Below, in pieces: positions 2,418-51,997 of a stretch of 64,000 nt of DNA (position 1 is the first letter of the stretch; the number at the start of each line of letters is the position of its first letter). The notes under the pieces are model-generated. The model was not told the DNA's origin, searched no databases, and worked only from the letters and a program-made list of their open reading frames with translations. Where the stretch lies: positions 124,001 to 188,000 of the IMG/VR virus record IMGVR_UViG_3300024259_000010, one strand, 5' to 3'. Both the position numbers and the translations under genes were made by a program.

Positions 2418-3449
2418 ATGCAAAAGAACAGTATTCTCAGTACACATTTTTCAAGTATGTATAATTTACCAGCTCTCATTAAACCTGCACATGTTTGGTT
2501 ATTAGATAAAAGTAGATTAGACATGGACCAATCTGAATACAGTGAGTTGATTAATTCAATCAATCCATTACAGAAAAATCCGATCAGTGATTGCTTCCTA
2601 ACTATTAAAAGAAACAATTCTTTTAGTAATATTTATTTCATAAGTTCAGTACTTAATAAAAAATTAAGTGTTCCTGAAATCTTAACTATTAACGATCTAT
2701 CTATTTATGGTAAGCAGATTAATTATATCAAAGATCCTGATCTTAAGAAATCTTGGATTAATATTTCTGGTTCAATTAATGCACCATCTAGAAATAGATA
2801 TGGTAGTATTACAGTTGCATCAGTTAATGAAATCATGAACTCTGTGGTAAGAGCAAATCTATGTATGTCTTATGCTGATAGAAAAGAATGGACCTCTGCA
2901 TCAAACGCTGCTTTCTTAATTGAAACATATGCTACTATGATGCGTCTTGTTCTGGATAGAGCTTATCGATTAGACTTAGAGGAAAGTGTTATCTTTAAAT
3001 ATGCATTTGCGTATTATTATGCTTACCTTATTAATGACACTATGGAAGATGGTGCTCCAGTATTGTTGAAGCGGTGTACAACACTCTTCAAACATTCTAG
3101 CACATCACTTGGTGATCTTGCTGGCATGATGAAGGATACCTTAAAAGGACATCCTCCAACTATTCCATTAATCGTTGAGTTCATTAAAAAGAATGGACCA
3201 CCTCGTGTTAAGTCGTTGTCACCTGAAATGCTATACAGAGTTTTATCTGTAGCATCTAGTAATAGTGTTTCAACATGGTTAGCTATTGACTACCCACCTT
3301 ACTTAGCATACTTAATTCTGTTGACAGTATCTGGAACTAAACATCCAATCCTGTCGAATGTAATGAACAATATGTTCTCTCAAACATATGTTAAGAAACA
3401 TGTGGATGAACTGATTAAATATAACAAGACGTATATCGGAGAAAAATAA
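2418..3449 (+). CDS. Conserved jumbo-phage virion/baseplate-region protein (position of phiKZ gp28)
   Basis: 343 aa ORF with AGGAG RBS; divergent from the sheath gene; first of a three-gene block; AIDYPP motif. Assignment is mainly by synteny. Confidence 0.55.
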   Translation: MQKNSILSTHFSSMYNLPALIKPAHVWLLDKSRLDMDQSEYSELINSINPLQKNPISDCFLTIKRNNSFSNIYFISSVLNKKLSVPEILTINDLSIYGKQINYIKDPDLKKSWINISGSINAPSRNRYGSITVASVNEIMNSVVRANLCMSYADRKEWTSASNAAFLIETYATMMRLVLDRAYRLDLEESVIFKYAFAYYYAYLINDTMEDGAPVLLKRCTTLFKHSSTSLGDLAGMMKDTLKGHPPTIPLIVEFIKKNGPPRVKSLSPEMLYRVLSVASSNSVSTWLAIDYPPYLAYLILLTVSGTKHPILSNVMNNMFSQTYVKKHVDELIKYNKTYIGEK

Positions 3450-9683: not shown

Positions 9684-9780
9684 ATAAATAATAACAAGCA
9701 TAGTGGATCATCCACTATGCTTGTTATATTACTTTATTCAAACATTGTATGAAAAGTAAATAATGAATTAGGAGTTATAA

Positions 9781-10461
9781 ATGGATAACAGTAAATATTT
9801 TGAGAAGAAGGGGAGATCGTATATCTTCAAAGGAGATCTCTTGGAAGTGTTTATACCTATGCGGTATGCACAACATGGTTATTTGGAAATAGGGAACAAT
9901 GTTTCTACTATTGGTATTTTTGACATGACTATTAATGGTACAATTGAAACAGGTTATCTATTAGGTGCTGTTATTGAAATGTATCCATCTGATATTGAGT
10001 CAGTAACTATTGACCAACAGAAGTATGCAAAACTTATTCTACATAAAGATGATGTATTTATTAAAGACTGTAATGTTGTTAAAGATGCTAAGATCTCATA
10101 TATTATCTTTTATGAAATGTTCCACTCAGGACACTACCCTAAGTTTTTGAAGTACTTCGATTGTATTGGTATCTTTGATAGAATTATGAAAGCTAATGGA
10201 GACTCGTTCTCAGCTGACCATATGATCTTTGAAATGATTGTATCTGTATTGTTTAGAGATACTAAGAATATGTCTACTCTATTTAGACATACTAATATGA
10301 AGGGTACTTACCAAACTATCCCTCTAAGAACTATCGCACATGTTGCACAATCTACTACAGGTAAGATCATGGGGTCTTATATGAATGAAGGGTTGGATGC
10401 AGCTATTGTCAATGCTGACGATGTTGTATCAAATGATATTGAAGATCTATTAAGGCAGTAA
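9781..10461 (+). CDS. Probable virion RNA polymerase beta' C-terminal fragment (phiKZ gp176 / SPN3US gp244-like)
   Basis: 226 aa; C-terminal STTGKIMGSYMNEGLDAAIVN...IEDLLR resembles the beta' C-terminus; lies near the prohead protease as in phiKZ-like phages; late-type motif at 9743. Confidence 0.55.
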   Translation: MDNSKYFEKKGRSYIFKGDLLEVFIPMRYAQHGYLEIGNNVSTIGIFDMTINGTIETGYLLGAVIEMYPSDIESVTIDQQKYAKLILHKDDVFIKDCNVVKDAKISYIIFYEMFHSGHYPKFLKYFDCIGIFDRIMKANGDSFSADHMIFEMIVSVLFRDTKNMSTLFRHTNMKGTYQTIPLRTIAHVAQSTTGKIMGSYMNEGLDAAIVNADDVVSNDIEDLLRQ

Positions 10462-10462
10462 T

Positions 10463-11437
10463 ATGAGGTATATATATTCCATAGATGAACGTGTAGCTCA
10501 TTATTCAGGTAACCCATATAACCATATATTCCATCGAAGTGATTTACCAAAAATGTTTGATTACCATAAATGGGCAGTATGTATGGGAGATGATATTGAC
10601 AATAGTGATATTGAAGATACAACGGAAATGAGCGATTATCATAAAAATTTGGTTGGATGTTATCATAGAATATATAATACTATTAATTCTGTAAAAAAAG
10701 AATATCCACATTTAAAAGATAAAAAAGCATTGGCTCATGTTTCAGATAATACAGCCTCATGGGAGATACCTATAATATGTAAAACCAGACCTATCGATAA
10801 TATTGGTGGTAATACTATAGCTCCTATCCGGATGACAAGAAATTATGGACATGTATTAGAATTACCTAGGATAGATTGTAAAGTATCGGAAAAAATACCT
10901 GGTGTTATGTGGCGTGGACTACTACATCTTAAAAAAAATTATAGACTGAATAACAGATTGTCTTTAATTGAGAAGTTTTATAATCATCCAAATGATCTAA
11001 TAAATATAAAACATACAGGGATACCATGTAATGAGTTTGTAGCAAGTGAAGAAGTACTTGGATATAAATTTGGTGATTATTTGAGTGTGGGAGAGATGCT
11101 CAAATATAGATTCAATGTATCTATAGAGGGTTGGGATATGGCATCTAATCTCCAGTGGATTCTTGCTAGCAACTCTATTGCTATGGCCCCTAAGATGGTT
11201 ATAGAGAGTTGGTTCATGGAGAGTAAGTTAGAACCATGGGTCCACTACATACCTATTGAAGATGATTGTTCAGATTTAATAGAGGTATATGAATGGGCAT
11301 TAATGCACCCAAATGCATGTGATGTGATTAATAGAAATGCTAAGATGTTTATGAATGAATTTGTAGATAAAAAACGTGAAAGAGAAATATTCTTTAGAGT
11401 AGTTAAGAAGTATCTTGAGAATTGTAATTTTGTTTAA
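10463..11437 (+). CDS. Glycosyltransferase family 90 (CAP10-like), paralog 1
   Basis: K..GVMWRG, R, MLKYRFNVSIEGWDMASNLQWILASNS, ESWFME..LEPWVHYIPI motifs. Confidence 0.85.
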   Translation: MRYIYSIDERVAHYSGNPYNHIFHRSDLPKMFDYHKWAVCMGDDIDNSDIEDTTEMSDYHKNLVGCYHRIYNTINSVKKEYPHLKDKKALAHVSDNTASWEIPIICKTRPIDNIGGNTIAPIRMTRNYGHVLELPRIDCKVSEKIPGVMWRGLLHLKKNYRLNNRLSLIEKFYNHPNDLINIKHTGIPCNEFVASEEVLGYKFGDYLSVGEMLKYRFNVSIEGWDMASNLQWILASNSIAMAPKMVIESWFMESKLEPWVHYIPIEDDCSDLIEVYEWALMHPNACDVINRNAKMFMNEFVDKKREREIFFRVVKKYLENCNFV

Positions 11438-11446
11438 GGGAGTAAT

Positions 11447-12385
11447 ATGAATTATAAATATACGATTGATGAGAGGGTAAATTTCTATTTAGGTAATATG
11501 GATAAAAGATGTTACGATTACATGAAGGATATTACACCACGTGTACGTAATTATATATATACTGTATTGATAGGAAATAATATTGACAACACTGAAGTAT
11601 TAACTGGTGGTAAGGGTGCATTAGTTAATTCATTTAAATATATAGAAGGCACTCTTAATAAATTAATCAACGATGGTGTATGTCCTATAGATAAAACAAT
11701 ATTGGTATATTTAGCGGATCAAAATAGATTACGAACATTCCCAATGATTGCTAAAACACGTTTGATTGATGATAATGGTAATATTACCATAGCACCTATT
11801 GGTAGAGCTAGACACTATGGTCCCGTAGCAGACCTGCCTAATATTGATTGTAAAGTTAGTGATAAATGTAATAAAATTGTCTGGAGAGGACATTGTCAAC
11901 CTATGAATAATATTATTCATATTAGACAAGAAGTGGTTTCTAAATTTGCCGAACATAAAAACTCTAATATAGATATTGGATATTCTTCGGGTGTAGCAAC
12001 TGGATCTACATTATTAAAGAATAAGATGACATTACGTGAATTGTTGAGATATAGATTTAATATATCATTGGAAGGAAATGATGTTGCTACCAACCTTAAG
12101 TGGATTCTTGCTAGTAATTCAATAGCCGTAGCTCCTAGGATGACAACCGAGGGTTGGTTTATGGAAAGTAAGTTAGAACCTTGGGTACACTATATACCTT
12201 TAGATGACGACTGTATGGATATAGAGGACAAGTTAAATTGGGGGATATCTAATCCTGATAAATGTATTGATATTAATAAAAATGCTAATAAGTTTATGTT
12301 AGAGTTCGTGGACATAGAACGTGAGAATGAAATATTCTACAGAGTCCTGAAATCATATATTGAAAACATACATATAAATATTTAA
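11447..12385 (+). CDS. Glycosyltransferase family 90 (CAP10-like), paralog 2
   Basis: KIVWRG, LLRYRFNISLEGNDVATNLKWILASNS, EGWFMESKLEPWVHYIPL; clearly paralogous to the upstream gene. Confidence 0.85.
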   Translation: MNYKYTIDERVNFYLGNMDKRCYDYMKDITPRVRNYIYTVLIGNNIDNTEVLTGGKGALVNSFKYIEGTLNKLINDGVCPIDKTILVYLADQNRLRTFPMIAKTRLIDDNGNITIAPIGRARHYGPVADLPNIDCKVSDKCNKIVWRGHCQPMNNIIHIRQEVVSKFAEHKNSNIDIGYSSGVATGSTLLKNKMTLRELLRYRFNISLEGNDVATNLKWILASNSIAVAPRMTTEGWFMESKLEPWVHYIPLDDDCMDIEDKLNWGISNPDKCIDINKNANKFMLEFVDIERENEIFYRVLKSYIENIHINI

Positions 12386-12398
12386 AAGAAAGTAATCT

Positions 12399-13145
12399 AT
12401 GTTAGATTTTATAATAACCGGCCCATCTAGATCAGGTACAACAGGGTTAACCTACCTATTAAATTCTAGCTCTGAAGTACTATGTGGTCATGAAACTCAC
12501 GTGTTGGATTATTGGGACAAAGATATATCAGATCGTATAAGAAATAATATATTAGAGAAAATGTTTTATTCTGACCGTACACCAAGCATACTTGATTTTA
12601 CACCGAAAGGTGTAACCCCAGATATGTTAAAGACAATAGTTGAGACAAGTTCTACTGGTAAAGAATTATTTGATAGATTAAACAGTATTGCAAAATGTAA
12701 TTGTGTTGGTGATAAAGTACCTGGATATATTGTAACCCTTCCACAAATTCTTAAAAATAACCCACAACTTAAATTACTGATATGTATTCGTGATGGTCGA
12801 TCTATACTGGCATCACATTTACGTGGTTTAGAACCCGGATGGGCTACAGACAATATAAAAGATGCAGAAGAGCGAATAGTTATCTTTATGAATATCATTA
12901 ATAATATTGAGAATCATGATAAAGTTATATATGTTCCATATGAACACTATACACAACATACTGATTTTTTGATTAGAAGACTTGAGTCGTTTCTTGATAC
13001 CAAACTATCTAACTGTAATACTGATAAATATCGTGACTATACAGATTGGGATGACGTGTTCAAACAGCTACCGAAAGATTATATGGATAAAGTATCTCCA
13101 GAATTTATAGAATATCAAAAGAAATTTGGATATTCTTTAGTGTAA
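12399..13145 (+). CDS. PAPS-dependent sulfotransferase
   Basis: 5'-PSB loop FIITGPSRSGTT, GDKVP, 3'-PB motif IRDGRSILAS, YE motif. Confidence 0.8.
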   Translation: MLDFIITGPSRSGTTGLTYLLNSSSEVLCGHETHVLDYWDKDISDRIRNNILEKMFYSDRTPSILDFTPKGVTPDMLKTIVETSSTGKELFDRLNSIAKCNCVGDKVPGYIVTLPQILKNNPQLKLLICIRDGRSILASHLRGLEPGWATDNIKDAEERIVIFMNIINNIENHDKVIYVPYEHYTQHTDFLIRRLESFLDTKLSNCNTDKYRDYTDWDDVFKQLPKDYMDKVSPEFIEYQKKFGYSLV

Positions 13146-13157
13146 ATAGAGGATGAT

Positions 13158-13277
13158 ATAATTTATAGATATTCATTAGAAGAACGTATTAATTTTTATT
13201 TAGGTAATATTGTGAAATGTAAAAATGTAACTATTATAAGTGATAACGATGAACATTATTTTAAGCTAAATATTTAA
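13158..13277 (+). pseudogene. Remnant of a third GT90 paralog (ATA in place of ATG, internal deletion)
   Basis: After a GAGGA RBS it reads (I)IYRYSLEERINFYLGN...KLNI*, compared with MNYKYTIDERVNFYLGN...HINI* of paralog 2; both end in AAATATTTAAAAG. Confidence 0.7.
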
Positions 13278-13342
13278 AAGCAATCGTTTTTATCTAAATC
13301 ATTGTATGGTGTAAATTAATTTTTAAAATAAAGGAATAATCT

Positions 13343-14188
13343 ATGAAAAATAAAAGTCTAGCATTCTCTGTTCAGACCATGCAAACTGTTCTCGGTAATG
13401 GACTAAAGTCTATTAAGCCAGACAAAGATGGTGTTTATAAAGGTGTACCATTAGCTGTAATTGGCAAACCATCTAGAAACAATGTTGTATACGATCAGAA
13501 TAGCTTTGTTGAATCTATCACTAATCCTAATACACGATTCTATAAGAGTTTAGTAGAAGGTGGTCTTGAAGGCGAGTGGGGTCATCCCATGAACATTGGT
13601 TTAAATAATAAAGATGCTATCATGCGTACCATGCAGATCGATGGTTCGAGAGTATCACATTACTTCACTAAAGTATATGCTAAGAAAACCAAAGATGGTG
13701 AGTACTACGTTGTATATGGTGACATTGTTCCTTTCGGACCTAATGGTCAGTACTTAGCTGCATCATTCCAAGACACTAAAAGAAATACTGCATTCTCTTT
13801 ACGCTCACTGACAACTGATCCTGAATCAATTGGTGGTGGTTTATGCCGTAAGAAGATCCTTGCATTAATTACTTTCGATGCTGTTAATACCCCTGGGTAT
13901 CAAGAAGCATGTAAATGCTTTATGGATACTGGCGAAGAATCATTTAAGTATGAACTTACTGAAGAGCAGATCGTATCTGCTGGTCTAGAAGACTTTGCTA
14001 CAGTTGAATGTGCTGAAGTTATTGGACAAGAAACTGTATCACATCAGTCTTTATTAGATTTACTAGAAACTGATAGCGTCACGCTTGCTACAAAAGAAAT
14101 CTCTGTTGTTGGAAACTTTGATAAGAAAACTGGTAGTATCCGTACTGGCACTTCTAATATCTCTGCGTTCCATGGTCTGTTCCGTTAA
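13343..14188 (+). CDS. Prohead (head maturation) protease, phiKZ gp175-like
   Basis: GEWGHP (His), AFSLRS (Ser), TFDAVNTPG (Asp); C-terminal G-x-E motifs (TGEE, AGLE, IGQE) consistent with autoprocessing. Confidence 0.85.
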   Translation: MKNKSLAFSVQTMQTVLGNGLKSIKPDKDGVYKGVPLAVIGKPSRNNVVYDQNSFVESITNPNTRFYKSLVEGGLEGEWGHPMNIGLNNKDAIMRTMQIDGSRVSHYFTKVYAKKTKDGEYYVVYGDIVPFGPNGQYLAASFQDTKRNTAFSLRSLTTDPESIGGGLCRKKILALITFDAVNTPGYQEACKCFMDTGEESFKYELTEEQIVSAGLEDFATVECAEVIGQETVSHQSLLDLLETDSVTLATKEISVVGNFDKKTGSIRTGTSNISAFHGLFR

Positions 14189-14208: not shown

Positions 14209-14784
14209 ATGTTTAATAAATTACGATTAATGAAAAGAAAGTCTGTGAATTATCCGACGATCTCTCATCATAAAGATGAAGATGGAAAGTCAACATGGAT
14301 AATTTCCATTCGTGGAATTATTGGAGGACAAGAATTATATACTGATGTATGTAATATCTTACTAACAGCATCTGAAGATGATACTGTTATCATTACTTTA
14401 AATACTCCAGGGGGAGTGGTCTTTACTGGGCTAGCAATTATTCATGCTATGCAGAAAAGTAGAGCAACCGTAGTAACGAGAGTTATCGGAATGGCTGCAT
14501 CATGTGGAGCGTTAATCTGGTCATATGGACAAAAGTTAGAAATGTGTCCATTCTCTAGATTAATGTTTCACGCATCTTCTGGGGGATTCATGGGTAAGAC
14601 CCGTGATCAGAGAGATTATGCTGAAGTCACCGAAACTCTTATGAAGAGTATAAATCAACGTGCTTTAACTAAGAACATCATTACTGCAAAACAGTTTGAA
14701 GATATGTTTGAAGCACGTCAAGATGTATACTTAAATTCTAAGGATTTAGAAAACAATAACGTGGAGTTCAACTATGCATCTTAA
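14209..14784 (+). CDS. clpP: ClpP-like serine protease
   Basis: LNTPGG, GMAASCG (catalytic Ser), LMFH (catalytic His), D-x-Y-L near the C-terminus. Confidence 0.8.
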   Translation: MFNKLRLMKRKSVNYPTISHHKDEDGKSTWIISIRGIIGGQELYTDVCNILLTASEDDTVIITLNTPGGVVFTGLAIIHAMQKSRATVVTRVIGMAASCGALIWSYGQKLEMCPFSRLMFHASSGGFMGKTRDQRDYAEVTETLMKSINQRALTKNIITAKQFEDMFEARQDVYLNSKDLENNNVEFNYAS

Positions 14785-15580: not shown

Positions 15581-15674
15581 ATATCATATAGCAGTGTAGG
15601 CATTTGCCTACACTGCTATATATTTACCCAAGTACACTATAGTATACTATTAAACAGATAAGGAGAAATCCTAT

Positions 15675-17771: not shown

Positions 17772-17866
17772 ATAAAGTTAGGTGTACTAGGATTAACCTA
17801 GTACACCTTTCTTTATATATTTCAAAACCATATTATGAACTAAATTTAATAATGTAAAAGGAAACT

Positions 17867-34838: not shown

Positions 34839-35075
34839 TTTTAACATAAAAATGAATGGTATACAATACTTTATGTGTATCATTATATGCAATATAAAGA
34901 TAAAAAAATTGCATCGATGAAAATTGATGGATGTTTGCAACAGTTTATAGCTAGATCGTGTAATTAACGTGTGTGTGTTGGTGTGTGTGCTCTAGCATTG
35001 AACTTAGTAAATAAAAATTTATTTAATCACTTGCAATTAATAGTTTATATGAATAAATATAAAAAGGATAATATT

Positions 35076-37211
35076 ATGGATATTAACGCATTATTACAAA
35101 ACATCGAAGATGAATGCCGCGAAGGTAAAGTCGGTGGTGATGTTCTTACTACAGCTCGCGTTGTAAGTAAGTCTGTTACTGACTTCCTCTCTACAAATGC
35201 TGTAGGGTCTTCTTCCGAAGATTTCGTCGGACAAACTTTTAACATGAATAAAGCTTTCGGACAAGAGGAACTTGAATCCCTCGGTTCTAGCTCTATTATC
35301 GCACTCGTTGAAGAAGCTGGTGTTCCTACTCATTATAAAGCCGAAGCTGCAGCTACTGTTGCTAACCTGCTTTTCCGTGCTGCTGGTTCTTCTAGTGATT
35401 TCAATGCTGTTGTAAGCTCACAGACCAAACGTGCTGATAACGCCGGTTCGTCTGTTATTGGTATTGAACAGTTCATGCCTGAAGCAGTAAGTAACTTCTA
35501 CGTTGGCCAAGAGGCTTTCGGTGCTACTTCTGACCGTGTAATTTCTGACCTCCAGGTTGCTATTACCGTTAGCTTGCTCAAATGGCATAACACGATTACG
35601 CCTCGCGTACTCTCTAACATCCCTACAACCCAGCCTACGGTTAACTACATCCGTGAAGAACTGACTGTTTACCAACTCGAATCCGATGTTGAAAACGACC
35701 AGTCCCTGATCGACCTGTATGAAAACCCTGCTCTTGTTAGCAATGAACTGACCCGTATCATTCCTTTAGATAAGAATGATGAAGTCGGTGGTGCTGGTGG
35801 AGTCGGTGGAGCTGTTGTTTCAGATGGTATCCTCAATTTCGGCGTCGAAGCACGTCTATTGGAATTAGGTATCAAAGCTGATGTCTATGGATATAATAAA
35901 TATAATCGTACTGATATCGTTGCTGACGGTGTTAAGCTTGACACGATTCATATCAATATTACATCTGATGGTGGAACCACTGAATCGTTCGCTATTTCTA
36001 TCCCTGACAGTCGTTCACGTTTGACTCGTTCTAATAATCAGCTCAGTACTATCCGTACTGCACATATTGATTATACAACGACTCTTAACGTTAAATCTAC
36101 TGCTGACGGTGTTACAACTCCTTCTACTGAGTTGTTAGCGATTCTCGCTGCTACTGGTGATAGCCTGGTTATCAAACTTGAAGCTACTCCACGTATTGAT
36201 ATCCGTGACGGTATGGCTCATTGCTTAGGTGCATTATCTGTATCTGCTGTTTCTGATAACGGTGGCGATGCTGATAGCGCAACTACTGCTGCTCTTACTG
36301 CTTCTGATATCGAACTTAAGGGTTATTCCTTAGACGCTCGTTATGCAGAAGAAAATATGCGCAAGTCGAATATCGCTACTACTACTGAGCGTGCTCAGCT
36401 GGTATACGAAATTCCACAAGGCCGTAACTACCTCTTGGACGTTCCACTGAACGGACCACAGGTTGATCGTTCGCAGAACACTGCTAACCTTTACAATGTA
36501 TGTCGTATTGGTCAAGACAATGTAGTTCTGAAAACTATCTTGGCTGTGCTTGCTGATGTTGGTGTTGCTACTGAAGCATATGACTTAGATCCTACGCGTG
36601 AAAATCGCCCAGGTGCTATGTTCGCTGCAGGTGGACGTGTACGTCCTACGTATATCGCTGATACTCTTAACATGACTGGAATCGATTCGTTCGATGACGC
36701 TCGTCGTCAAGAAGCTATTCAGGGTCGCGTTCTAACGTACCTCAACTCTGTTGTTCAGCAGATCATGGCTACTTCGTTCTTCAGCCAACAGCTTGATGGC
36801 AATAGTGCTCCGACTTTCCGTCTGATCACTGGTCCTCAGATTCTTGGTAACATTGTTGGTGCTAAGCCAGGTGAATTCCAGGTTGAAAACGCTAATGGTG
36901 TTGAACTGACATTGAAGATGACCTCTGGCGTTGTGCTTGAGTGTGTTACTTCTACGTTTGACTTCATGCAAGATAAGATCGTTATCGTGCCGTTCCTCTC
37001 CGGAGATCCTGCATCTGATCTTAACTTTGGACATAACCGTGACTTCGGTACTGTTGTTGGTAGTTATACCCACAATGAAAACGGTGCTGCTGTACAGCGT
37101 CTGCTTGCTAATATCCGTGAGCTTCCTGTTCCTACCAATGTTATTGGTGCGATCTTGGATGTTGAAGGTATTGACATCGCTACGTTCCGTGCTGACATTG
37201 TCACGCCGTAA
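35076..37211 (+). CDS. Major capsid protein (phiKZ gp120-like)
   Basis: 711 aa from ATG 35076 (AAGGA RBS); G-x-E propeptide sites (FGQE, IGIE, VGQE); GYSLDARYAEENMR and LNFGH motifs; strongly biased high-expression codons; strong terminator; synteny with dnaB. Confidence 0.85.
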   Translation: MDINALLQNIEDECREGKVGGDVLTTARVVSKSVTDFLSTNAVGSSSEDFVGQTFNMNKAFGQEELESLGSSSIIALVEEAGVPTHYKAEAAATVANLLFRAAGSSSDFNAVVSSQTKRADNAGSSVIGIEQFMPEAVSNFYVGQEAFGATSDRVISDLQVAITVSLLKWHNTITPRVLSNIPTTQPTVNYIREELTVYQLESDVENDQSLIDLYENPALVSNELTRIIPLDKNDEVGGAGGVGGAVVSDGILNFGVEARLLELGIKADVYGYNKYNRTDIVADGVKLDTIHINITSDGGTTESFAISIPDSRSRLTRSNNQLSTIRTAHIDYTTTLNVKSTADGVTTPSTELLAILAATGDSLVIKLEATPRIDIRDGMAHCLGALSVSAVSDNGGDADSATTAALTASDIELKGYSLDARYAEENMRKSNIATTTERAQLVYEIPQGRNYLLDVPLNGPQVDRSQNTANLYNVCRIGQDNVVLKTILAVLADVGVATEAYDLDPTRENRPGAMFAAGGRVRPTYIADTLNMTGIDSFDDARRQEAIQGRVLTYLNSVVQQIMATSFFSQQLDGNSAPTFRLITGPQILGNIVGAKPGEFQVENANGVELTLKMTSGVVLECVTSTFDFMQDKIVIVPFLSGDPASDLNFGHNRDFGTVVGSYTHNENGAAVQRLLANIRELPVPTNVIGAILDVEGIDIATFRADIVTP

Positions 37212-49500: not shown

Positions 49501-49949
49501 AAACAATGCCAATTGGTACTTATATTGTTCATGCTAGAAATAAAAATAATAATGTTTATAACGCAGCTATTGTATTAACGGATGATGGTAGAGAGTTTAT
49601 CGATTACCGTGGACGTAATTCAGTCGGTGATGATAGTGGTAATTCTGGTACATTATCTAAAACTGTTGTTCCTGGAACAACGTATACGTTGATACCAACT
49701 GACAATGGTAAGATAATTGAATTCACTAGTGCTACTGCTGTTACCTTAACAGTCCCAGTTGATTTATCTTCTACATTTAATTGTACAATACTTCAGTCTG
49801 GTGCTGGACAGATAACTATTGTTGATGATGGAACTTCTACTGTTAACAATGCAGATAACTTCTTTACTACTGAAAAGCCATATGTGTTTGTTTCACTATT
49901 GCATCTAGGTAGTAATAACTTCGTCATTGACGGGAGGTTAATACCATGA
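46503..49949 (+). CDS. Tail fibre-like protein
   Basis: 1148 aa, G/T/N/D-rich mosaic; duplicated H.D.S..GSGAIIT..ER motif; GNDGRL/DARLSD..DP..H segments; C-terminal TYTL..TDNGKII...GAGQITI domain common in phage fibres. Confidence 0.7.
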   Translation: MILINGIQQGGAGLDPVDEAKVDNITVENPVNLDDVVAETDANTNHADGPVTDHTDVSNAGSGAIITVAERNAITENSGKVSADESVETHSDISSKGSGAIITDQERIDLGIAKDASHTEHVADDVEWSTEHEHVNSMKDVIDHVWSAGACGGVDNFKITKIGSGGVTVTDGYAVLRNDVTSHASLDGYHIPASGDIYVANNKTSIIYIDQATQSVLHTDAIDQVMMNNQRTIIYAVNRVDDALNIVDFRAYNVDYLRKNSLKDWSVNGIEYGGGAFVTDGAVTHTMQISSGLFFLLNTVLTTPEINTDVTHVDNDPLVDIFDYVYTDGDGDWDRNPGSTVINKLQYDTGTGLANIGNKDFGCHYVYTVLNSPSHYVVVLGKGSYSSYADAIATPVPSGSLVPPDLAKPSTATHIATIITKQDNTWFYDVLTPFYDNLVSSFNLPITHNEHNGIQGGDDVNKEYYHITEAQEAAIGGSIAKTALITVASAVDLNDMPVSEDQQAAINNAVVGMYDHIGGYNGTTNVPSLDDRNDPGTPIIADILKGHTYTVEVEGTFFGESVEVGDHIISNQDDPSELSHWSRVNKNISFGSTQGTACEGNDGRLPSVNEKAAMKGTEVGDPPSATNEFITNDDARLSDDRDPNTHAGNHISGGEDPIREATNGQNGLATASHIQKIEASYSVKHSHVNKVNLDTIDQNMAKADSPEFAGATIGGVNFNDTLALMHNPTGFDRMNVASYGTLTLNGGTTRTVTHGLNGQDIEYYRHGVKISKTEAQVTTQFPNTEGLWFIYYNETDTLVITQTPWNVAADHHVFVAILYWDAVNEVGVLGEERHGLMDPYTHDIMHHGIGSLHRGGFDPTFTIGNGSADAHCEIQGFTAGSFSDEDIINVNDEQTTYEVWWKEGSETAPVWRWETASAAAVSMAGSRPYWNQLTGGTWQRTEMTDNDYMCMHPIALNRYGVTNKVILIMGENLYETAAEARVAAPGELNTIRFGSLPSPETMPIGTYIVHARNKNNNVYNAAIVLTDDGREFIDYRGRNSVGDDSGNSGTLSKTVVPGTTYTLIPTDNGKIIEFTSATAVTLTVPVDLSSTFNCTILQSGAGQITIVDDGTSTVNNADNFFTTEKPYVFVSLLHLGSNNFVIDGRLIP

Positions 49950-51997
49950 GATTAGGAAACTTACCTATAGCGAGTACCAAGACAACACTTAAGACTGGAT
50001 TAGTTGGATGGTGGTTAATGGATAAGATCGTAGGTGGTAAGGTTCAGGACCTTAGTGGTAATGGCCACGATGCCACCGTTGTAGGTGATGTTGAAGACGG
50101 GCATAGAGGGTTACATGGAGGCTCCCTCTATTTCCCCGGAACCAACGATCGCTTAGTAGTAGCACATACTGCAAAACTTGCAATAACAGGAAGTATTACA
50201 ATATCCTATTGGGTAAATATAGATAAGGGTGAAACTGGTGATCAGATGGTACTATCTAAAAGTGCTGGTTTTGAACCAGGTGGATACCAATCATATATGA
50301 ATGGTGGTCTTGAAGGTTATGGTATGCGATTTGGTCGCGGTAATGATCTTCCTGATCCTGATGATAGTAGTGAACGTAGGAATTGTGATCTATTAAATCA
50401 TACTGGAGTATGGGCCAACTATTCAGTATCATGTACTTCAGTAGGGGATGTTCATACATTAAGATTCTTTATCAATGGGGTATTCTCCAATGAAGATGTG
50501 TTTACTGAACCGGTTATTGACAGGGGTAATGATCTATGGATAGGTGAATCCCCAGGCGGTAGTCGTGATTTTAATGGACACTTAGCTGACTTACGTATAT
50601 GGAATCGAGCATTGACTGATACTGAAATGGAAATTGTATATAACGATATTAACTATAATATTAGACCTGCTTTGAAACTTAAGCTTAATGATGTTGATGA
50701 AACAAACAGGCTTCTTGATAATGCTTACCGTAGTAGTGAAGTTTTGATTAACTCTACTGAACCGGAAGATATGGTGGGGCATCCTGGTATATTCGGTAAT
50801 GACTTATGTTTTAAATTTGATAACAATGATGACTTTTTAAGCATAATTCCATCTACTACAATATTTGATTGTTTACTTGGTGATTTCACATTCTTAGGGT
50901 GGTTTAATACAACGGCTGGTTCTGTTACTAATGAAGTTCTGATAGCACAGGCTAAAGATGATGGTGATATTACTCCAGCACCTATATCTATAGAAGTGAA
51001 TACTAATGATGTATTAACAATGAGATTCGGTGATGGTATTGATTCTACTACTTCAACAGGGACTTCTCTTGTGACTCGTGGTAGATGGGAACATATAGCA
51101 GTTGTAGTATCAGGAACGTCAGTATATTTTTATATTAATACTGTTCTCGATGCTAGTGGTGCTATAACTAATACTAAAACTAGAGCATTTGGTGAGCAAG
51201 AACTGCGTATAGGTATAAGACAACTTGCTAGAGACTTCGGTGGATTTATGGATCATCTTGAACTACATCCTAGTGCATGGTCACAAGATAGTATTCAAGA
51301 AGATTATAATGAAACTGATTCACTTGGATCATATGGTGATCTGGAATGTTGGTATAAGTTAAATGAAGAGTCTGGAACAGTTGCAGAAGATTATTCAAAG
51401 AACCACAATAACTTAAATATATCAAGTGGTGTAACTATTAATCAACCTGGTCAAATATATAAATCATATGAAATGGATGGATCGGTTAATTCTGTAGTTC
51501 AAGCAACTGGTCTTTCTGGATTACCAGCTATTGGTACTGGGGATTATACAATATCTCTGTGGATGAAAATAAATGGTACCCCGGCTGATAGTACTCAATC
51601 ATTACTTGCATTTGGTGGGTTTTCAAATGGACTAGTGTTGCGATATATTGTAAGTGGTGAAGGCACAACTGGTTACTTTAGTATGTCTGAAAACACTAGA
51701 GGTGAAAATAGTCCAAGTAGAGCAGGTCTTAATGATAATGTATGGCATCATGTATGTGTTATAAGATACAATGGGCTTATATCTTATCATATAGATAATG
51801 TATTAGAAGGTACGGATGAGTCCGATGATGGTTCTGGTGACACTAATGACATTACTGTCGCCCCTACACTTATTGAACTTGGTAGAAATGGTGCTGGTAA
51901 TCAGGAACTTGATGGTTGGATAGATGATGTACGTTTCTATTCTAAAGCATTAACTAATTACCAGATTCAACAACTGTCAGAAATGAGCGAACCTTAA
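49946..51997 (+). CDS. Triple LamG/concanavalin-like domain protein
   Basis: Three repeats with GLVGWW/LECWYKL...D.SGN, TIS.W, WHHV and F.G..DD.R...AL. Confidence 0.85.
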   Translation: MRLGNLPIASTKTTLKTGLVGWWLMDKIVGGKVQDLSGNGHDATVVGDVEDGHRGLHGGSLYFPGTNDRLVVAHTAKLAITGSITISYWVNIDKGETGDQMVLSKSAGFEPGGYQSYMNGGLEGYGMRFGRGNDLPDPDDSSERRNCDLLNHTGVWANYSVSCTSVGDVHTLRFFINGVFSNEDVFTEPVIDRGNDLWIGESPGGSRDFNGHLADLRIWNRALTDTEMEIVYNDINYNIRPALKLKLNDVDETNRLLDNAYRSSEVLINSTEPEDMVGHPGIFGNDLCFKFDNNDDFLSIIPSTTIFDCLLGDFTFLGWFNTTAGSVTNEVLIAQAKDDGDITPAPISIEVNTNDVLTMRFGDGIDSTTSTGTSLVTRGRWEHIAVVVSGTSVYFYINTVLDASGAITNTKTRAFGEQELRIGIRQLARDFGGFMDHLELHPSAWSQDSIQEDYNETDSLGSYGDLECWYKLNEESGTVAEDYSKNHNNLNISSGVTINQPGQIYKSYEMDGSVNSVVQATGLSGLPAIGTGDYTISLWMKINGTPADSTQSLLAFGGFSNGLVLRYIVSGEGTTGYFSMSENTRGENSPSRAGLNDNVWHHVCVIRYNGLISYHIDNVLEGTDESDDGSGDTNDITVAPTLIELGRNGAGNQELDGWIDDVRFYSKALTNYQIQQLSEMSEP

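What the first reader, a model, noticed from the sequence alone, without database searches (positions are those of the whole stretch)
10463..13277. Glycosylation-sulfation cassette (GT90 x2, sulfotransferase, decayed GT90) embedded in virion morphogenesis genes
Seen: two tandem CAP10/GT90 paralogs, a PAPS-dependent sulfotransferase and a third GT90 remnant sit with 1-13 nt gaps directly behind the probable vRNAP fragment gene, downstream of the late-type motif at 9743 and just before the prohead protease. Known: the gp176-like and gp175-like genes are neighbours in phiKZ/SPN3US, so this looks like an insertion; GT90 includes protein O-glucosyl/xylosyltransferases. Inference: a late-expressed pathway that builds a sulfated glycan on virion proteins (shielding, adhesion, mimicry of sulfated polysaccharide) or remodels the host surface receptor. 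I know of no described phage system that combines GT90 with a sulfotransferase.
Basis: partly seen in the sequence, partly recalled or inferred. Interest (0 to 1): 0.85.

Follow-up and report, generated by a model that had tools for sequence, protein, structure and literature searches.

The report
Phage glycosyltransferase-sulfotransferase cassette in head genes
An uncultured phiKZ-like giant phage carries, wedged between two normally adjacent head-assembly genes, two sugar-adding enzymes and a sulfate-adding enzyme that probably build a small sulfated sugar decoration; what they decorate (most likely the virus particle) has not been shown.

Summary
Window 10463-13277 encodes two intact GT90 paralogs (42% identical), an intact PAPS-type sulfotransferase (Sulfotransfer_3) and a short dead 5' stub of a third GT90 (ATG changed to ATA). 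They sit 0-13 nt apart between a phiKZ gp176-like virion protein and the S80 prohead protease. The gp176-like gene is not an RNA polymerase fragment.

In 6 of 7 metagenomic relatives, and in cultured phages, those two flanking genes are adjacent. The cassette is therefore an insertion. One relative carries different enzyme cargo at the same junction.

The closest known homolog of the sulfotransferase lies in an unrelated T4-like phage. There it is 1 nt downstream of a GT90 and just upstream of gp15 and the portal gene. GT90-ST thus recurs as a linked pair inside virion gene blocks. Other viral relatives of the sulfotransferase sit among glycan-building genes. Viral GT90s otherwise occur almost only in giant eukaryotic viruses.

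Best reading: soluble, late-expressed enzymes make a sulfated glycan, most likely on virion proteins. Host envelope glycans remain a serious rival, and the target is untested. This is a new variant of virus-encoded glycosylation and is of moderate to high interest.

The parts
9691..9727 (.). 17-bp-stem hairpin (terminator-like) that closes the upstream operon, just before the promoter-like motif
   Evidence: 17 pairs, 6 GC, loop 3, T-rich tail; sequence
9743..9751 (+). Promoter-like motif CATTGTATG, followed by GTAAATAAT, 30 nt upstream of the gp176-like start codon. Proposed start of the transcription unit that includes the cassette.
   Evidence: The same class (TCATTnTATG) lies about 30-45 nt upstream of the starts at 2418, 13343, 17867, 20855(-), 24590(-) and 31496(-). 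Assigning it to 'late' rests on analogy with phiKZ TATG late promoters (own knowledge).
9781..10461 (+). phiKZ gp176-like virion structural protein (226 aa), the conserved left flank
   Evidence: PHROG 2926 at 2.5e-47; 161 phage records match it, annotated 'virion structural protein'; no Pfam RNA polymerase domain
10463..11437 (+). GT90a, glycosyltransferase family 90 (324 aa)
   Evidence: PF05686 at 4.5e-16; 42% identical to GT90b; carries all family-invariant residues; no transmembrane segment
11447..12385 (+). GT90b, glycosyltransferase family 90 (312 aa)
   Evidence: PF05686 at 2e-18; AF2 model pLDDT 89.4; Foldseek POGLUT2/POGLUT1/Rumi, E 8e-15 to 2e-10, TM 0.68-0.72; family profile against POGLUT2, E 4e-25
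12399..13145 (+). PAPS-type sulfotransferase, Sulfotransfer_3 (248 aa)
   Evidence: PF13469 at 2.9e-13; invariant R11, G13, E32, P108, R131, S139 and near-invariant K106; AF2 pLDDT 92.5; Foldseek TPST1/2, Stf9, CurM/OLS sulfotransferases
13146..13277 (+). Dead 5' stub of a third GT90 paralog. The start codon is ATA; about 20-27 codons are recognisable, followed by unrelated sequence up to a stop.
13300..13308 (+). Second exact copy of CATTGTATG (followed by GTAAATTAAT), 34 nt upstream of the protease start. Relative L002 has no such motif in its 38-nt gp176-like/protease spacer.
13343..14188 (+). phiKZ gp175-type prohead protease (Peptidase_S80), the conserved right flank
   Evidence: PF20034 at 1.7e-31; PHROG 3014; 46% identical to the L002 ortholog

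Best explanation
This is a three-gene accessory module (GT90a, GT90b and a PAPS-dependent sulfotransferase, plus the stub of a third GT90). It was inserted into the head-morphogenesis operon of an uncultured phiKZ-like (chimallivirus-type) jumbo phage, between the gp176-like virion protein gene and the prohead protease gene.

Shown:
- All three proteins are intact and predicted to be soluble.
- They keep the invariant residues of their families.
- The cassette has the phage's own base composition.
- The GT90-ST pair recurs in an unrelated T4-like phage, next to gp15 and the portal gene.

Inferred:
- The genes are co-transcribed with virion genes from a TATG-type (late-like) promoter.
- The two diverged GT90s each add a sugar from a host UDP-sugar. 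Their acceptor-side N-domains are 20% identical, against 59% in the donor-side C-domains.
- The sulfotransferase then sulfates that glycan using host PAPS.
- The acceptor is most likely one or more virion proteins made at the same time, giving the particle a small anionic glycan coat.

My confidence that this is a working sulfated-glycan module is about 0.75. My confidence that the acceptor is the virion is about 0.45, and that is the figure given as the overall confidence.
For: Enzyme identity and integrity.

Soluble proteins (maximum 19-residue hydropathy below 1.0), with GC, GC3 and codon use like the rest of the window.

Insertion at a conserved junction:
- gp176-like and the protease are adjacent in L016 and L018-L022 (6 of 7 relatives).
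- L002 has a 38-nt spacer.
- Cultured phages such as FLC8 show the same adjacency.

One transcription unit: a hairpin at 9691-9727, then the motif at 9743, with no terminator and no copy of the TATG-type motif (one mismatch allowed) until 13300.

Linkage:
- The best sulfotransferase homolog among 1.8 billion representatives (cluster of P0123/P0271, 33% identity) lies on L050. The order there is GT90 (PF05686, 2.9e-15), a 1-nt gap, the sulfotransferase, T4 gp15, then the T4 portal.
- None of 80 bacterial GT90 loci, and none of 20 giant-virus GT90 loci (17 from IMG/VR plus L004, L005 and L007), has this sulfotransferase family within 5-10 kb.

The sulfotransferase acts on glycans:
- Its relatives in viral contigs are flanked by GT2, GT1/4 and GT9 glycosyltransferases, polysaccharide deacetylase, pyruvyl transferase and methyltransferases.
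- In one metagenomic contig with no phage genes, probably bacterial, it sits in a polysaccharide-type gene cluster.

Virion context recurs: relatives lie next to head-tail adaptor and Neck1 genes (L045), a terminase-like gene (L051), a tailspike (L012), and gp15 plus portal (L050).

Precedents:
- Mycobacteriophage capsid and tail-tube glycosylation (Freeman 2023, as summarised in PMC12619734).
- Giant-virus fibril glycosylation clusters that include a sulfotransferase (PMC10117803).
- The nearest full-length GT90 relatives are in giant-virus contigs.
Against: - No acceptor was identified. No Ser/Thr-rich acceptor-like segment was found in the window's structural proteins.
- Bacterial members of this GT90 subfamily are named LPS-related. 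One sits in an all-glycosyltransferase polysaccharide cluster, which suits a glycan or lipid-linked acceptor as well as a protein.
- One phage relative of the sulfotransferase (L010) lies among early-type genes (rIIB, NUDIX, DHFR).
- No PAPS or nucleotide-sugar synthesis genes are in the window. The pathway would depend on a host that makes PAPS, and the host is unknown.
- Late timing rests on a motif analogy only.
- The junction also takes unrelated cargo in L017. The position may therefore reflect a permissive insertion site rather than function.
Confidence: 0.45

Rival explanations
1. Host envelope remodelling. The enzymes act at the cytoplasmic face on LPS core, O-antigen or capsule intermediates. 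They add sulfated sugars that change the receptor, for example to stop progeny or competitors adsorbing to infected cells and debris.
For: Bacterial homologs of this GT90 subfamily are widespread in diderm bacteria, with at least 589 species-representative hits. They are named LpsA or LPS-related. One sits in an all-glycosyltransferase polysaccharide locus. Sulfotransferase relatives occur in a polysaccharide-type gene cluster on a probably bacterial contig (L014), and one viral locus contains a GT9 heptosyltransferase.
Against: The cassette has no membrane protein, flippase or initiating transferase, and all three proteins are predicted soluble. It lies in a virion-gene operon of a lytic-type jumbo phage. 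Remodelling the surface late in infection gives little time for export. The GT90-ST pair is absent from 80 bacterial GT90 loci.
Confidence: 0.25
2. The sulfotransferase is a tyrosylprotein-sulfotransferase-like enzyme that sulfates tyrosines on phage or host proteins, independently of the GT90s.
For: The best solved-structure matches, by sequence and by fold, are human and tick TPST1/2 (E 0.007; Foldseek E 6e-10). Motifs are shared: GxxRSGTT, CGxET and RDGR...S.
Against: Identity is only about 20%, and TM-scores are no better than for the CurM/OLS sulfotransferases (0.67-0.68). A glutamate base and the PAPS loops are common to carbohydrate sulfotransferases (own knowledge). Homologs are consistently next to glycan-building genes, not peptide substrates.
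Confidence: 0.07
3. DNA or nucleotide hypermodification: glycosylation, and possibly sulfation, of modified bases to evade restriction.
For: Phage glycosyltransferases commonly glycosylate DNA (Pyle 2024, as cited in PMC12619734). PMC10829341 cites Iyer 2013 for glycosyl/sulfo-transferase base-modification systems. One sulfotransferase relative sits among early genes next to a GT1 gene (L010).
Against: No hydroxymethylase, TET/JBP or thymidylate-synthase-like gene is in the window. The cassette lies in a virion operon rather than a replication block. The GT90 family has no known DNA-modifying member (own knowledge). No sulfated DNA base is known (own knowledge).
Confidence: 0.05
4. Functionally neutral or decaying hitch-hiker cargo at a permissive insertion hotspot.
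For: A third GT90 copy has already decayed. The same junction holds unrelated cargo in L017. Six of seven relatives do without any insert.
Against: The three ORFs are intact with every family-invariant residue. Composition is fully ameliorated. Identical proteins occur on four contigs. The GT90-ST linkage is conserved at about 33% protein identity in another phage lineage, which implies long-term selection on the pair.
Confidence: 0.06

Closest known systems
Mycobacteriophage virion glycosylation (Freeman et al. 2023, Cell Host Microbe; summarised in PMC12619734 and PMC11256854)
   Same: Phage-encoded cytoplasmic glycosyltransferases sit among structural genes. Their proposed or shown product is O-glycans on capsid and tail proteins that alter surface recognition.
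   Different: Those phages are actinobacteriophages and are not known (own knowledge) to use GT90, and no sulfotransferase is involved. Here the host is unknown, the phage is phiKZ-like, the enzymes are GT90, and a sulfation step is added. Glycosylation has not been shown here.
Megavirinae fibril glycosylation clusters with sulfotransferase (Moumouvirus australiensis ma457-ma468, Cotonvirus; Notaro et al. 2022, PMC10117803)
   Same: A virus-encoded glycosyltransferase-plus-sulfotransferase cluster is proposed to put sulfated sugars on virion surface structures. GT90-like proteins are common in giant viruses. One giant-virus contig has a GT90 and a Sulfotransfer_2 gene 1.4 kb apart.
   Different: Those are eukaryotic giant viruses that also encode SAT/APS kinase and nucleotide-sugar pathways. 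Here neither was found in the 64 kb examined. The sulfotransferase family (Sulfotransfer_3) and the compact 3-gene layout also differ. Sulfation is unproven there too.
Eukaryotic GT90 protein O-glucosyl/xylosyltransferases (POGLUT1/Rumi, POGLUT2)
   Same: Same fold across the whole length (TM 0.68-0.72). Shared donor-side motifs WRG and PWVHYIP.
   Different: About 15% identity. The phage, bacterial and giant-virus subfamily has its own EGNDVATNLKW...SNS motif. There are no EGF-repeat substrates in bacteria, and the N-terminal acceptor domain is not alignable by sequence.
Tyrosylprotein sulfotransferases TPST1/2 and bacterial Sulfotransfer_3 enzymes (Stf9, CurM/OLS sulfotransferase domains)
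   Same: Same fold and PAPS-binding loops, with a Glu aligned to the TPST catalytic base.
   Different: Only about 20% identity. The protein is a much shorter 248-aa core, and its genomic partners are glycan enzymes. It is not filed as a TPST.
Temperate-phage seroconversion cassettes (Gtr-type O-antigen glucosylation)
   Same: A phage-borne glycosyltransferase module that could alter host surface glycans.
   Different: Gtr systems use membrane proteins (flippase, bactoprenol glycosyltransferase, serotype-specific membrane glycosyltransferase; own knowledge). None is present here, and all three proteins are predicted soluble.

Membership tests
Glycosyltransferase family 90 (Pfam PF05686 / CAZy GT90) | Significant match to the family profile, above the curated cut-off | tested here: met
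   59.2 and 67.0 bits against a cut-off of 24
Glycosyltransferase family 90 (Pfam PF05686 / CAZy GT90) | GT-B two-domain fold superimposable on solved GT90 enzymes | tested here: met
   GT90b model pLDDT 89.4. POGLUT2, POGLUT1 and Rumi are the only strong PDB hits, E 8e-15 to 2e-10, TM 0.68-0.72.
Glycosyltransferase family 90 (Pfam PF05686 / CAZy GT90) | Conserved donor-side motifs (WRG..., PWVHYxP) | tested here: met
   Alignments to POGLUT1/2. R147, G148, W237, E240 and H248 are invariant or nearly so in 55 homologs, including both paralogs.
Glycosyltransferase family 90 (Pfam PF05686 / CAZy GT90) | N-domain catalytic Asp equivalent to the POGLUT1 base | tested here: inconclusive
   D91 is invariant in the family alignment. 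However, sequence-profile alignments to the POGLUTs cover only the C-domain, and no residue-level structural superposition was available.
Glycosyltransferase family 90 (Pfam PF05686 / CAZy GT90) | Sugar transfer from a UDP-sugar | not testable with these tools
   Needs an enzyme assay
PAPS-dependent sulfotransferase (Pfam PF13469 Sulfotransfer_3) | Profile match above the curated cut-off | tested here: met
   51.0 bits against 27; also Sulfotransfer_1, 23.2 against 22
PAPS-dependent sulfotransferase (Pfam PF13469 Sulfotransfer_3) | 5'-phosphosulfate loop (GxxRSGTT) and 3'-phosphate motif (RDGR...S) | tested here: met
   Residues 8-15 and 131-139. R11, G13, R131 and S139 are invariant in 53 homologs. 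They align to the same motifs in TPST1.
PAPS-dependent sulfotransferase (Pfam PF13469 Sulfotransfer_3) | Catalytic base | tested here: met
   E32 is invariant. It aligns with the second Glu of CGEET in TPST1. That this Glu is the TPST base is from own knowledge.
PAPS-dependent sulfotransferase (Pfam PF13469 Sulfotransfer_3) | Sulfotransferase fold | tested here: met
   pLDDT 92.5. 98 PDB hits at E<=1e-3; all 50 listed are sulfotransferase-fold proteins.
Tyrosylprotein sulfotransferase (TPST) | Close sequence or structure kinship, with peptide-binding and dimer elements | tested here: inconclusive
   It is the best PDB hit, but weak (E 0.007, about 20% identity, TM 0.54-0.62). The peptide groove was not examined.
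Tyrosylprotein sulfotransferase (TPST) | Genomic association with peptide or protein substrates rather than glycan enzymes | tested here: not met
   The neighbours of homologs are glycosyltransferases, polysaccharide deacetylase, pyruvyl transferase and methyltransferases.
Phage virion-glycosylation systems (mycobacteriophage type) | Glycosyltransferase genes embedded among virion structural genes | tested here: met
   The cassette lies between the gp176-like virion protein and the prohead protease. In L050 the pair lies next to gp15 and the portal.
Phage virion-glycosylation systems (mycobacteriophage type) | Glycans demonstrably attached to capsid or tail proteins | not testable with these tools
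   Needs virion mass spectrometry. No Ser/Thr-rich acceptor segment was seen in the window proteins.
Giant-virus glycosylation clusters with sulfate metabolism (Megavirinae) | Glycosyltransferase(s) plus sulfotransferase in one cluster | tested here: met
   compared with PMC10117803
Giant-virus glycosylation clusters with sulfate metabolism (Megavirinae) | Virus-encoded SAT/APS kinase and nucleotide-sugar synthesis genes | tested here: not met
   None among the ORFs of the 64-kb window that were scanned (the 39 ORFs of 114 aa or more and the 10). The remaining ~172 kb of the contig were not examined.
Gtr-type seroconversion cassette | Membrane-embedded flippase and glycosyltransferase components | tested here: not met
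   The maximum 19-residue Kyte-Doolittle hydropathy is 0.75-0.93 for the three cassette proteins, so no transmembrane segment is predicted.

The most novel reading that the evidence does not exclude
A mobile two-enzyme unit (GT90 plus a dedicated Sulfotransfer_3 sulfotransferase) moves between unrelated tailed-phage lineages and lands in their virion gene blocks. It decorates phage particles with sulfated O-glycans. That would be the first sulfated glycoconjugate on a bacterial virus, functionally parallel to giant-virus fibril glycans and possibly sharing ancestry with giant-virus GT90s.
Probability: 0.35. Interest if true: 0.8.

Novelty: new variant of a known kind. Interest (0 to 1): 0.6.

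Why it matters
Glycosylated phage virions are so far documented mainly in mycobacteriophages, and sulfated glycans on any phage are undocumented. A compact, intact GT90-GT90-sulfotransferase cassette in the head operon of a phiKZ-like jumbo phage gives a concrete candidate for charged glycan coats on phage particles. The recurrence of the same GT90-ST pair in a T4-like phage strengthens the case.

Such coats could affect adsorption, adhesion to mucus or particles, recognition by grazers or immune systems, and colloidal behaviour. The cassette also links phage and giant-virus glycosylation toolkits. Finally, it marks the gp176-like/protease junction as an accessory-gene hotspot in this phage group. 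The three genes are small and soluble, so biochemical tests are straightforward.

Tried and rejected
- DNA search of the region against GenBank phages found no match. tblastn of the sulfotransferase and of two phage relatives against cultured phages found none.
- The only 'phage' GT90 hit in that collection (MT836857) is an all-glycosyltransferase polysaccharide cluster, probably bacterial.
- The word-indexed protein search for the sulfotransferase gave only 2 hits. The exhaustive search was needed.
- NCBIfam gave no names.
- GT90 phylogeny could not resolve a donor. The window pair is a firm clade (100/99). Its link to the L050 GT90 (20/71), and to the giant-virus and bacterial groups, is unsupported.
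- The 291-aa genes upstream of the sulfotransferase in L010 and L012 are not GT90. They give weak GT-A-type matches (GT2, CAP59) and are unrelated to each other.
- A scan for Ser/Thr-rich acceptor segments in the window proteins found nothing convincing.
- CATTGTATG with one mismatch is not enriched window-wide (27 matches against 32 expected). Only its position upstream of starts is suggestive.
- The sigma-70-type scan was not above chance.
The single metagenome scan found only the window's own contig.
- Iyer 2013 and Freeman 2023 are not held in the library.
- The 'vRNAP fragment' label for 9781-10461 was rejected.


Full report
**What is in the sequence.** The window matches IMG/VR contig IMGVR_UViG_3300024259_000010 (235,833 bp; JGI record Ga0233437_1000081). 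On the + strand there are three tightly packed ORFs: 10463-11437 (324 aa), 11447-12385 (312 aa) and 12399-13145 (248 aa). The gaps are 1, 9 and 13 nt. Pfam assigns the first two to Glyco_transf_90 (4.5e-16 and 2e-18) and the third to Sulfotransfer_3 (2.9e-13), all above curated cut-offs. The two GT90s are 42% identical.

Directly after the sulfotransferase stop, 13146-13277 reads in frame as a peptide matching the first ~20 residues of both GT90s (E 3e-7 and 1e-3). The DNA alignment also covers the preceding stop and ribosome-binding region and shows ATA in place of ATG. Its scores exceed all 500 shuffles.

**Context.** The left neighbour (9781-10461) is PHROG 2926 'virion structural protein' (2.5e-47). 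It matches the protein annotated that way in 161 cultured jumbo phages and has no polymerase domain. The right neighbour is the phiKZ-type S80 prohead protease (1.7e-31). It is followed by a ClpP-like protease, a 268-aa ORF and the large terminase. Elsewhere the window holds the phiKZ major capsid protein (34971-37211), a vertex protein (2418-3449), internal head protein, a split RNA polymerase piece and replication genes. This is an uncultured phiKZ-like jumbo phage of about 32% GC with no close cultured relative.

**It is an insertion.** A protease profile recovered seven related contigs.
- In six of them the gp176-like gene ends 20-50 nt before the protease gene.
- In L002 the spacer is 38 nt, and the protease ortholog is 46% identical.
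- Cultured phages such as Burkholderia phage FLC8 show the same adjacency.
- The seventh relative, L017, has a different 2.3-kb insert at the same junction: a GNAT acetyltransferase, an unknown 258-aa protein and a C92-amidase-like protein.

The junction is therefore a hotspot for enzyme cargo. The cassette's GC, GC3 and codon usage fall within the range of the other window genes, so it is not a recent arrival. The identical arrangement is seen on four contigs.

**Transcription (inferred).** A 17-bp-stem hairpin at 9691-9727 is followed by CATTGTATG...GTAAATAAT at 9743, 30 nt before the gp176-like start. An exact second copy sits at 13300, before the protease. No terminator-like site, and no copy of this motif with one mismatch allowed, lies between them. 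The same motif class (TCATTnTATG) lies about 30-45 nt upstream of several other gene starts. A second class (ATATATTAC) precedes other genes. By analogy with phiKZ, whose late promoters centre on TATG and whose early promoters contain TATATTAC (own knowledge), the cassette would be co-transcribed late with virion genes. This has not been demonstrated.

**The enzymes look functional.**
- In a 55-sequence GT90 alignment both paralogs carry all invariant residues (D91, K140, R147, G210, D212, S223, S225, W237, E240, H248).
- The GT90b model (pLDDT 89.4) matches POGLUT2, POGLUT1 and Rumi over its whole length (TM 0.68-0.72, E down to 8e-15). These are the only strong PDB hits. The family profile hits POGLUT2 at 4e-25.
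- The paralogs are 59% identical in the C-terminal donor-side region (196-312) but 20% in residues 21-95 of the acceptor-side domain. This fits two steps or two acceptors.
- The sulfotransferase keeps the PAPS loops and the putative base (R11, G13, E32, K106, R131, S139). Its model has pLDDT 92.5.
- The nearest solved relatives of the sulfotransferase are TPST1/2, then Stf9 and the CurM/OLS sulfotransferase domains.
- None of the three proteins has a hydrophobic segment.

**Relatives and linkage.** GT90 is rare in tailed phages.
- The one GenBank 'phage' hit is really a polysaccharide gene cluster.
- BFVD lists one uncultured Caudovirales entry among many giant-virus proteins.
- IMG/VR hits are giant-virus MAGs, or contigs with giant-virus hallmarks.
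- The best full-length homologs (33-35% identity) sit on giant-virus contigs. One has a Sulfotransfer_2 gene 1.4 kb away.
- Bacterial homologs are abundant in diderm bacteria and cover only the C-terminal two-thirds.
- The tree shows the two window paralogs as a firm pair on a long branch, but no supported donor.

The sulfotransferase is isolated: only 17 of 1.8 billion representatives score below 1e-10. The key result is that its closest relative (33% identity) lies on L050, a T4-like phage fragment. The gene order there is GT90 (2.9e-15), a 1-nt gap, the sulfotransferase, gp15, then the portal.

By contrast, none of 80 bacterial GT90 loci, none of 20 giant-virus GT90 loci and none of 11 other sulfotransferase loci shows this pairing. 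The caveat is that only this sulfotransferase family was profiled. The GT90-ST pair therefore behaves as a linked unit in two unrelated phage lineages, both times inside virion genes.

**What the sulfotransferase family does elsewhere.** Its relatives on viral contigs sit in several kinds of neighbourhood.
- Directly beside glycosyltransferases: L010, L012, L044 and L051.
- Among GT2, GT1/4, GT9, polysaccharide deacetylase, pyruvyl transferase and methyltransferase genes.
- In a polysaccharide-type gene cluster on a probably bacterial contig (L014).
- Next to virion genes: head-tail adaptor and Neck1 (L045), a terminase-like gene (L051) and a tailspike (L012).
- One relative is in an early-type region (L010).

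This favours a carbohydrate acceptor over tyrosine, despite the TPST resemblance.

**Mechanism proposed.**
- Shown: intact, soluble GT90 x2 and a sulfotransferase, inserted as a unit; linkage conserved.
- Inferred: late co-expression with virion proteins; the GT90s add one or two sugars from host UDP-sugars; the sulfotransferase sulfates the product with host PAPS.
- Most likely acceptor: virion protein(s).
- Main rival: host LPS or capsule intermediates. Bacterial GT90s live in such loci.
- Minor rivals: tyrosine sulfation, DNA modification, or neutral cargo.
- Gaps: no PAPS or nucleotide-sugar genes are in the window, and the rest of the genome was not examined. No acceptor-like Ser/Thr-rich segment was found.

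**Comparison with the known.** Virion glycosylation by phage glycosyltransferases is established for mycobacteriophages (Freeman 2023, via PMC12619734). Giant-virus fibril glycosylation clusters that include a sulfotransferase and SAT/APS kinase have been described, with sulfation proposed but unverified (PMC10117803). Full-text searches found no paper describing GT90 in phages, or a GT90-plus-sulfotransferase system in phages. I therefore rate this as a new variant of a known kind. The enzymes and the general idea are familiar. The GT90-ST unit, its recurrence in phage virion modules and its presence in a phiKZ-like phage are new. The biological target remains untested.

Noticed in passing
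L017:3634-5968 (IMGVR_UViG_3300031741_000001): A relative of the window phage has a different three-gene insert at the same gp176-like/protease junction: a GNAT acetyltransferase (2.8e-16), an unknown 258-aa protein, and a 352-aa protein with a Peptidase_C92 amidase match and a faint SET match. The junction appears to be an accessory-enzyme hotspot.
   Followed up: partly
L050:3-4407 (JGI 3300008470, Ga0115371_10871737): A T4-like phage fragment carries GT90, sulfotransferase, gp15 and portal in one tight co-directional block. Its sulfotransferase is the closest known relative of the window's. The contig is only 4.5 kb and the GT90 is cut at the contig end.
   Followed up: partly
window 2381, 9743, 13300, 17825-17835, 20886(-), 24625(-), 31540(-); and upstream of 29204, 37627, 40001, 62093: There are two recurrent upstream motif classes. 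TCATTnTATG (often followed by GTAAAT) lies about 30-45 nt before several starts. ATATATTAC lies before others. They resemble phiKZ late (TATG) and early (TATATTAC) promoters (own knowledge).
   Followed up: partly
window 49946-51997: A 683-aa protein has three Laminin_G_3 (concanavalin-A-like lectin) domains (2.6e-55). It lies between two ORFs of more than 1100 aa with no family match. It could be a glycan-binding fibre or baseplate component.
   Followed up: no
L005:5002-8096 (ENA ERZ23498944 scaffold_574): A giant-virus contig (TopoII, Pox_A32, VLTF3) has a GT90 gene and a Sulfotransfer_2 gene 1.4 kb apart. This is an independent pairing of GT90 with a different sulfotransferase family.
   Followed up: no
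L041 (GenBank MT836857.1, 'UNVERIFIED: Bacteriophage sp.'): The 8.4-kb record consists entirely of glycosyltransferase genes (GT2, GT4, Branch/GT14, GT92-like, GT11, GT90, GT8, GT2). It looks like a bacterial surface-polysaccharide locus rather than phage DNA.
   Followed up: yes
window 14209-14784; L020/L021 6913-7398 and 8185-8706: A ClpP-like protease gene directly follows the S80 prohead protease in the window phage and in all seven relatives. Two relatives have two ClpP-like copies.
   Followed up: no
window 9691-9727 and 15585-15622: Two long (17-pair) near-perfect hairpins bracket the block from the gp176-like gene to the 268-aa ORF, just before the terminase gene. They may delimit one transcription unit.
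   Followed up: no
L045, L048, L049 (IMG/VR contigs): Three viral contigs share a layout in which a ~270-aa sulfotransferase is flanked by small ORFs. In L045 these give methyltransferase-like PHROG matches (6.7e-06 and 2.9e-05), and the block sits just upstream of head-tail adaptor and Neck1 genes. L048 and L049 were compared by ORF sizes only. This is another modification cassette in a structural module.
   Followed up: partly
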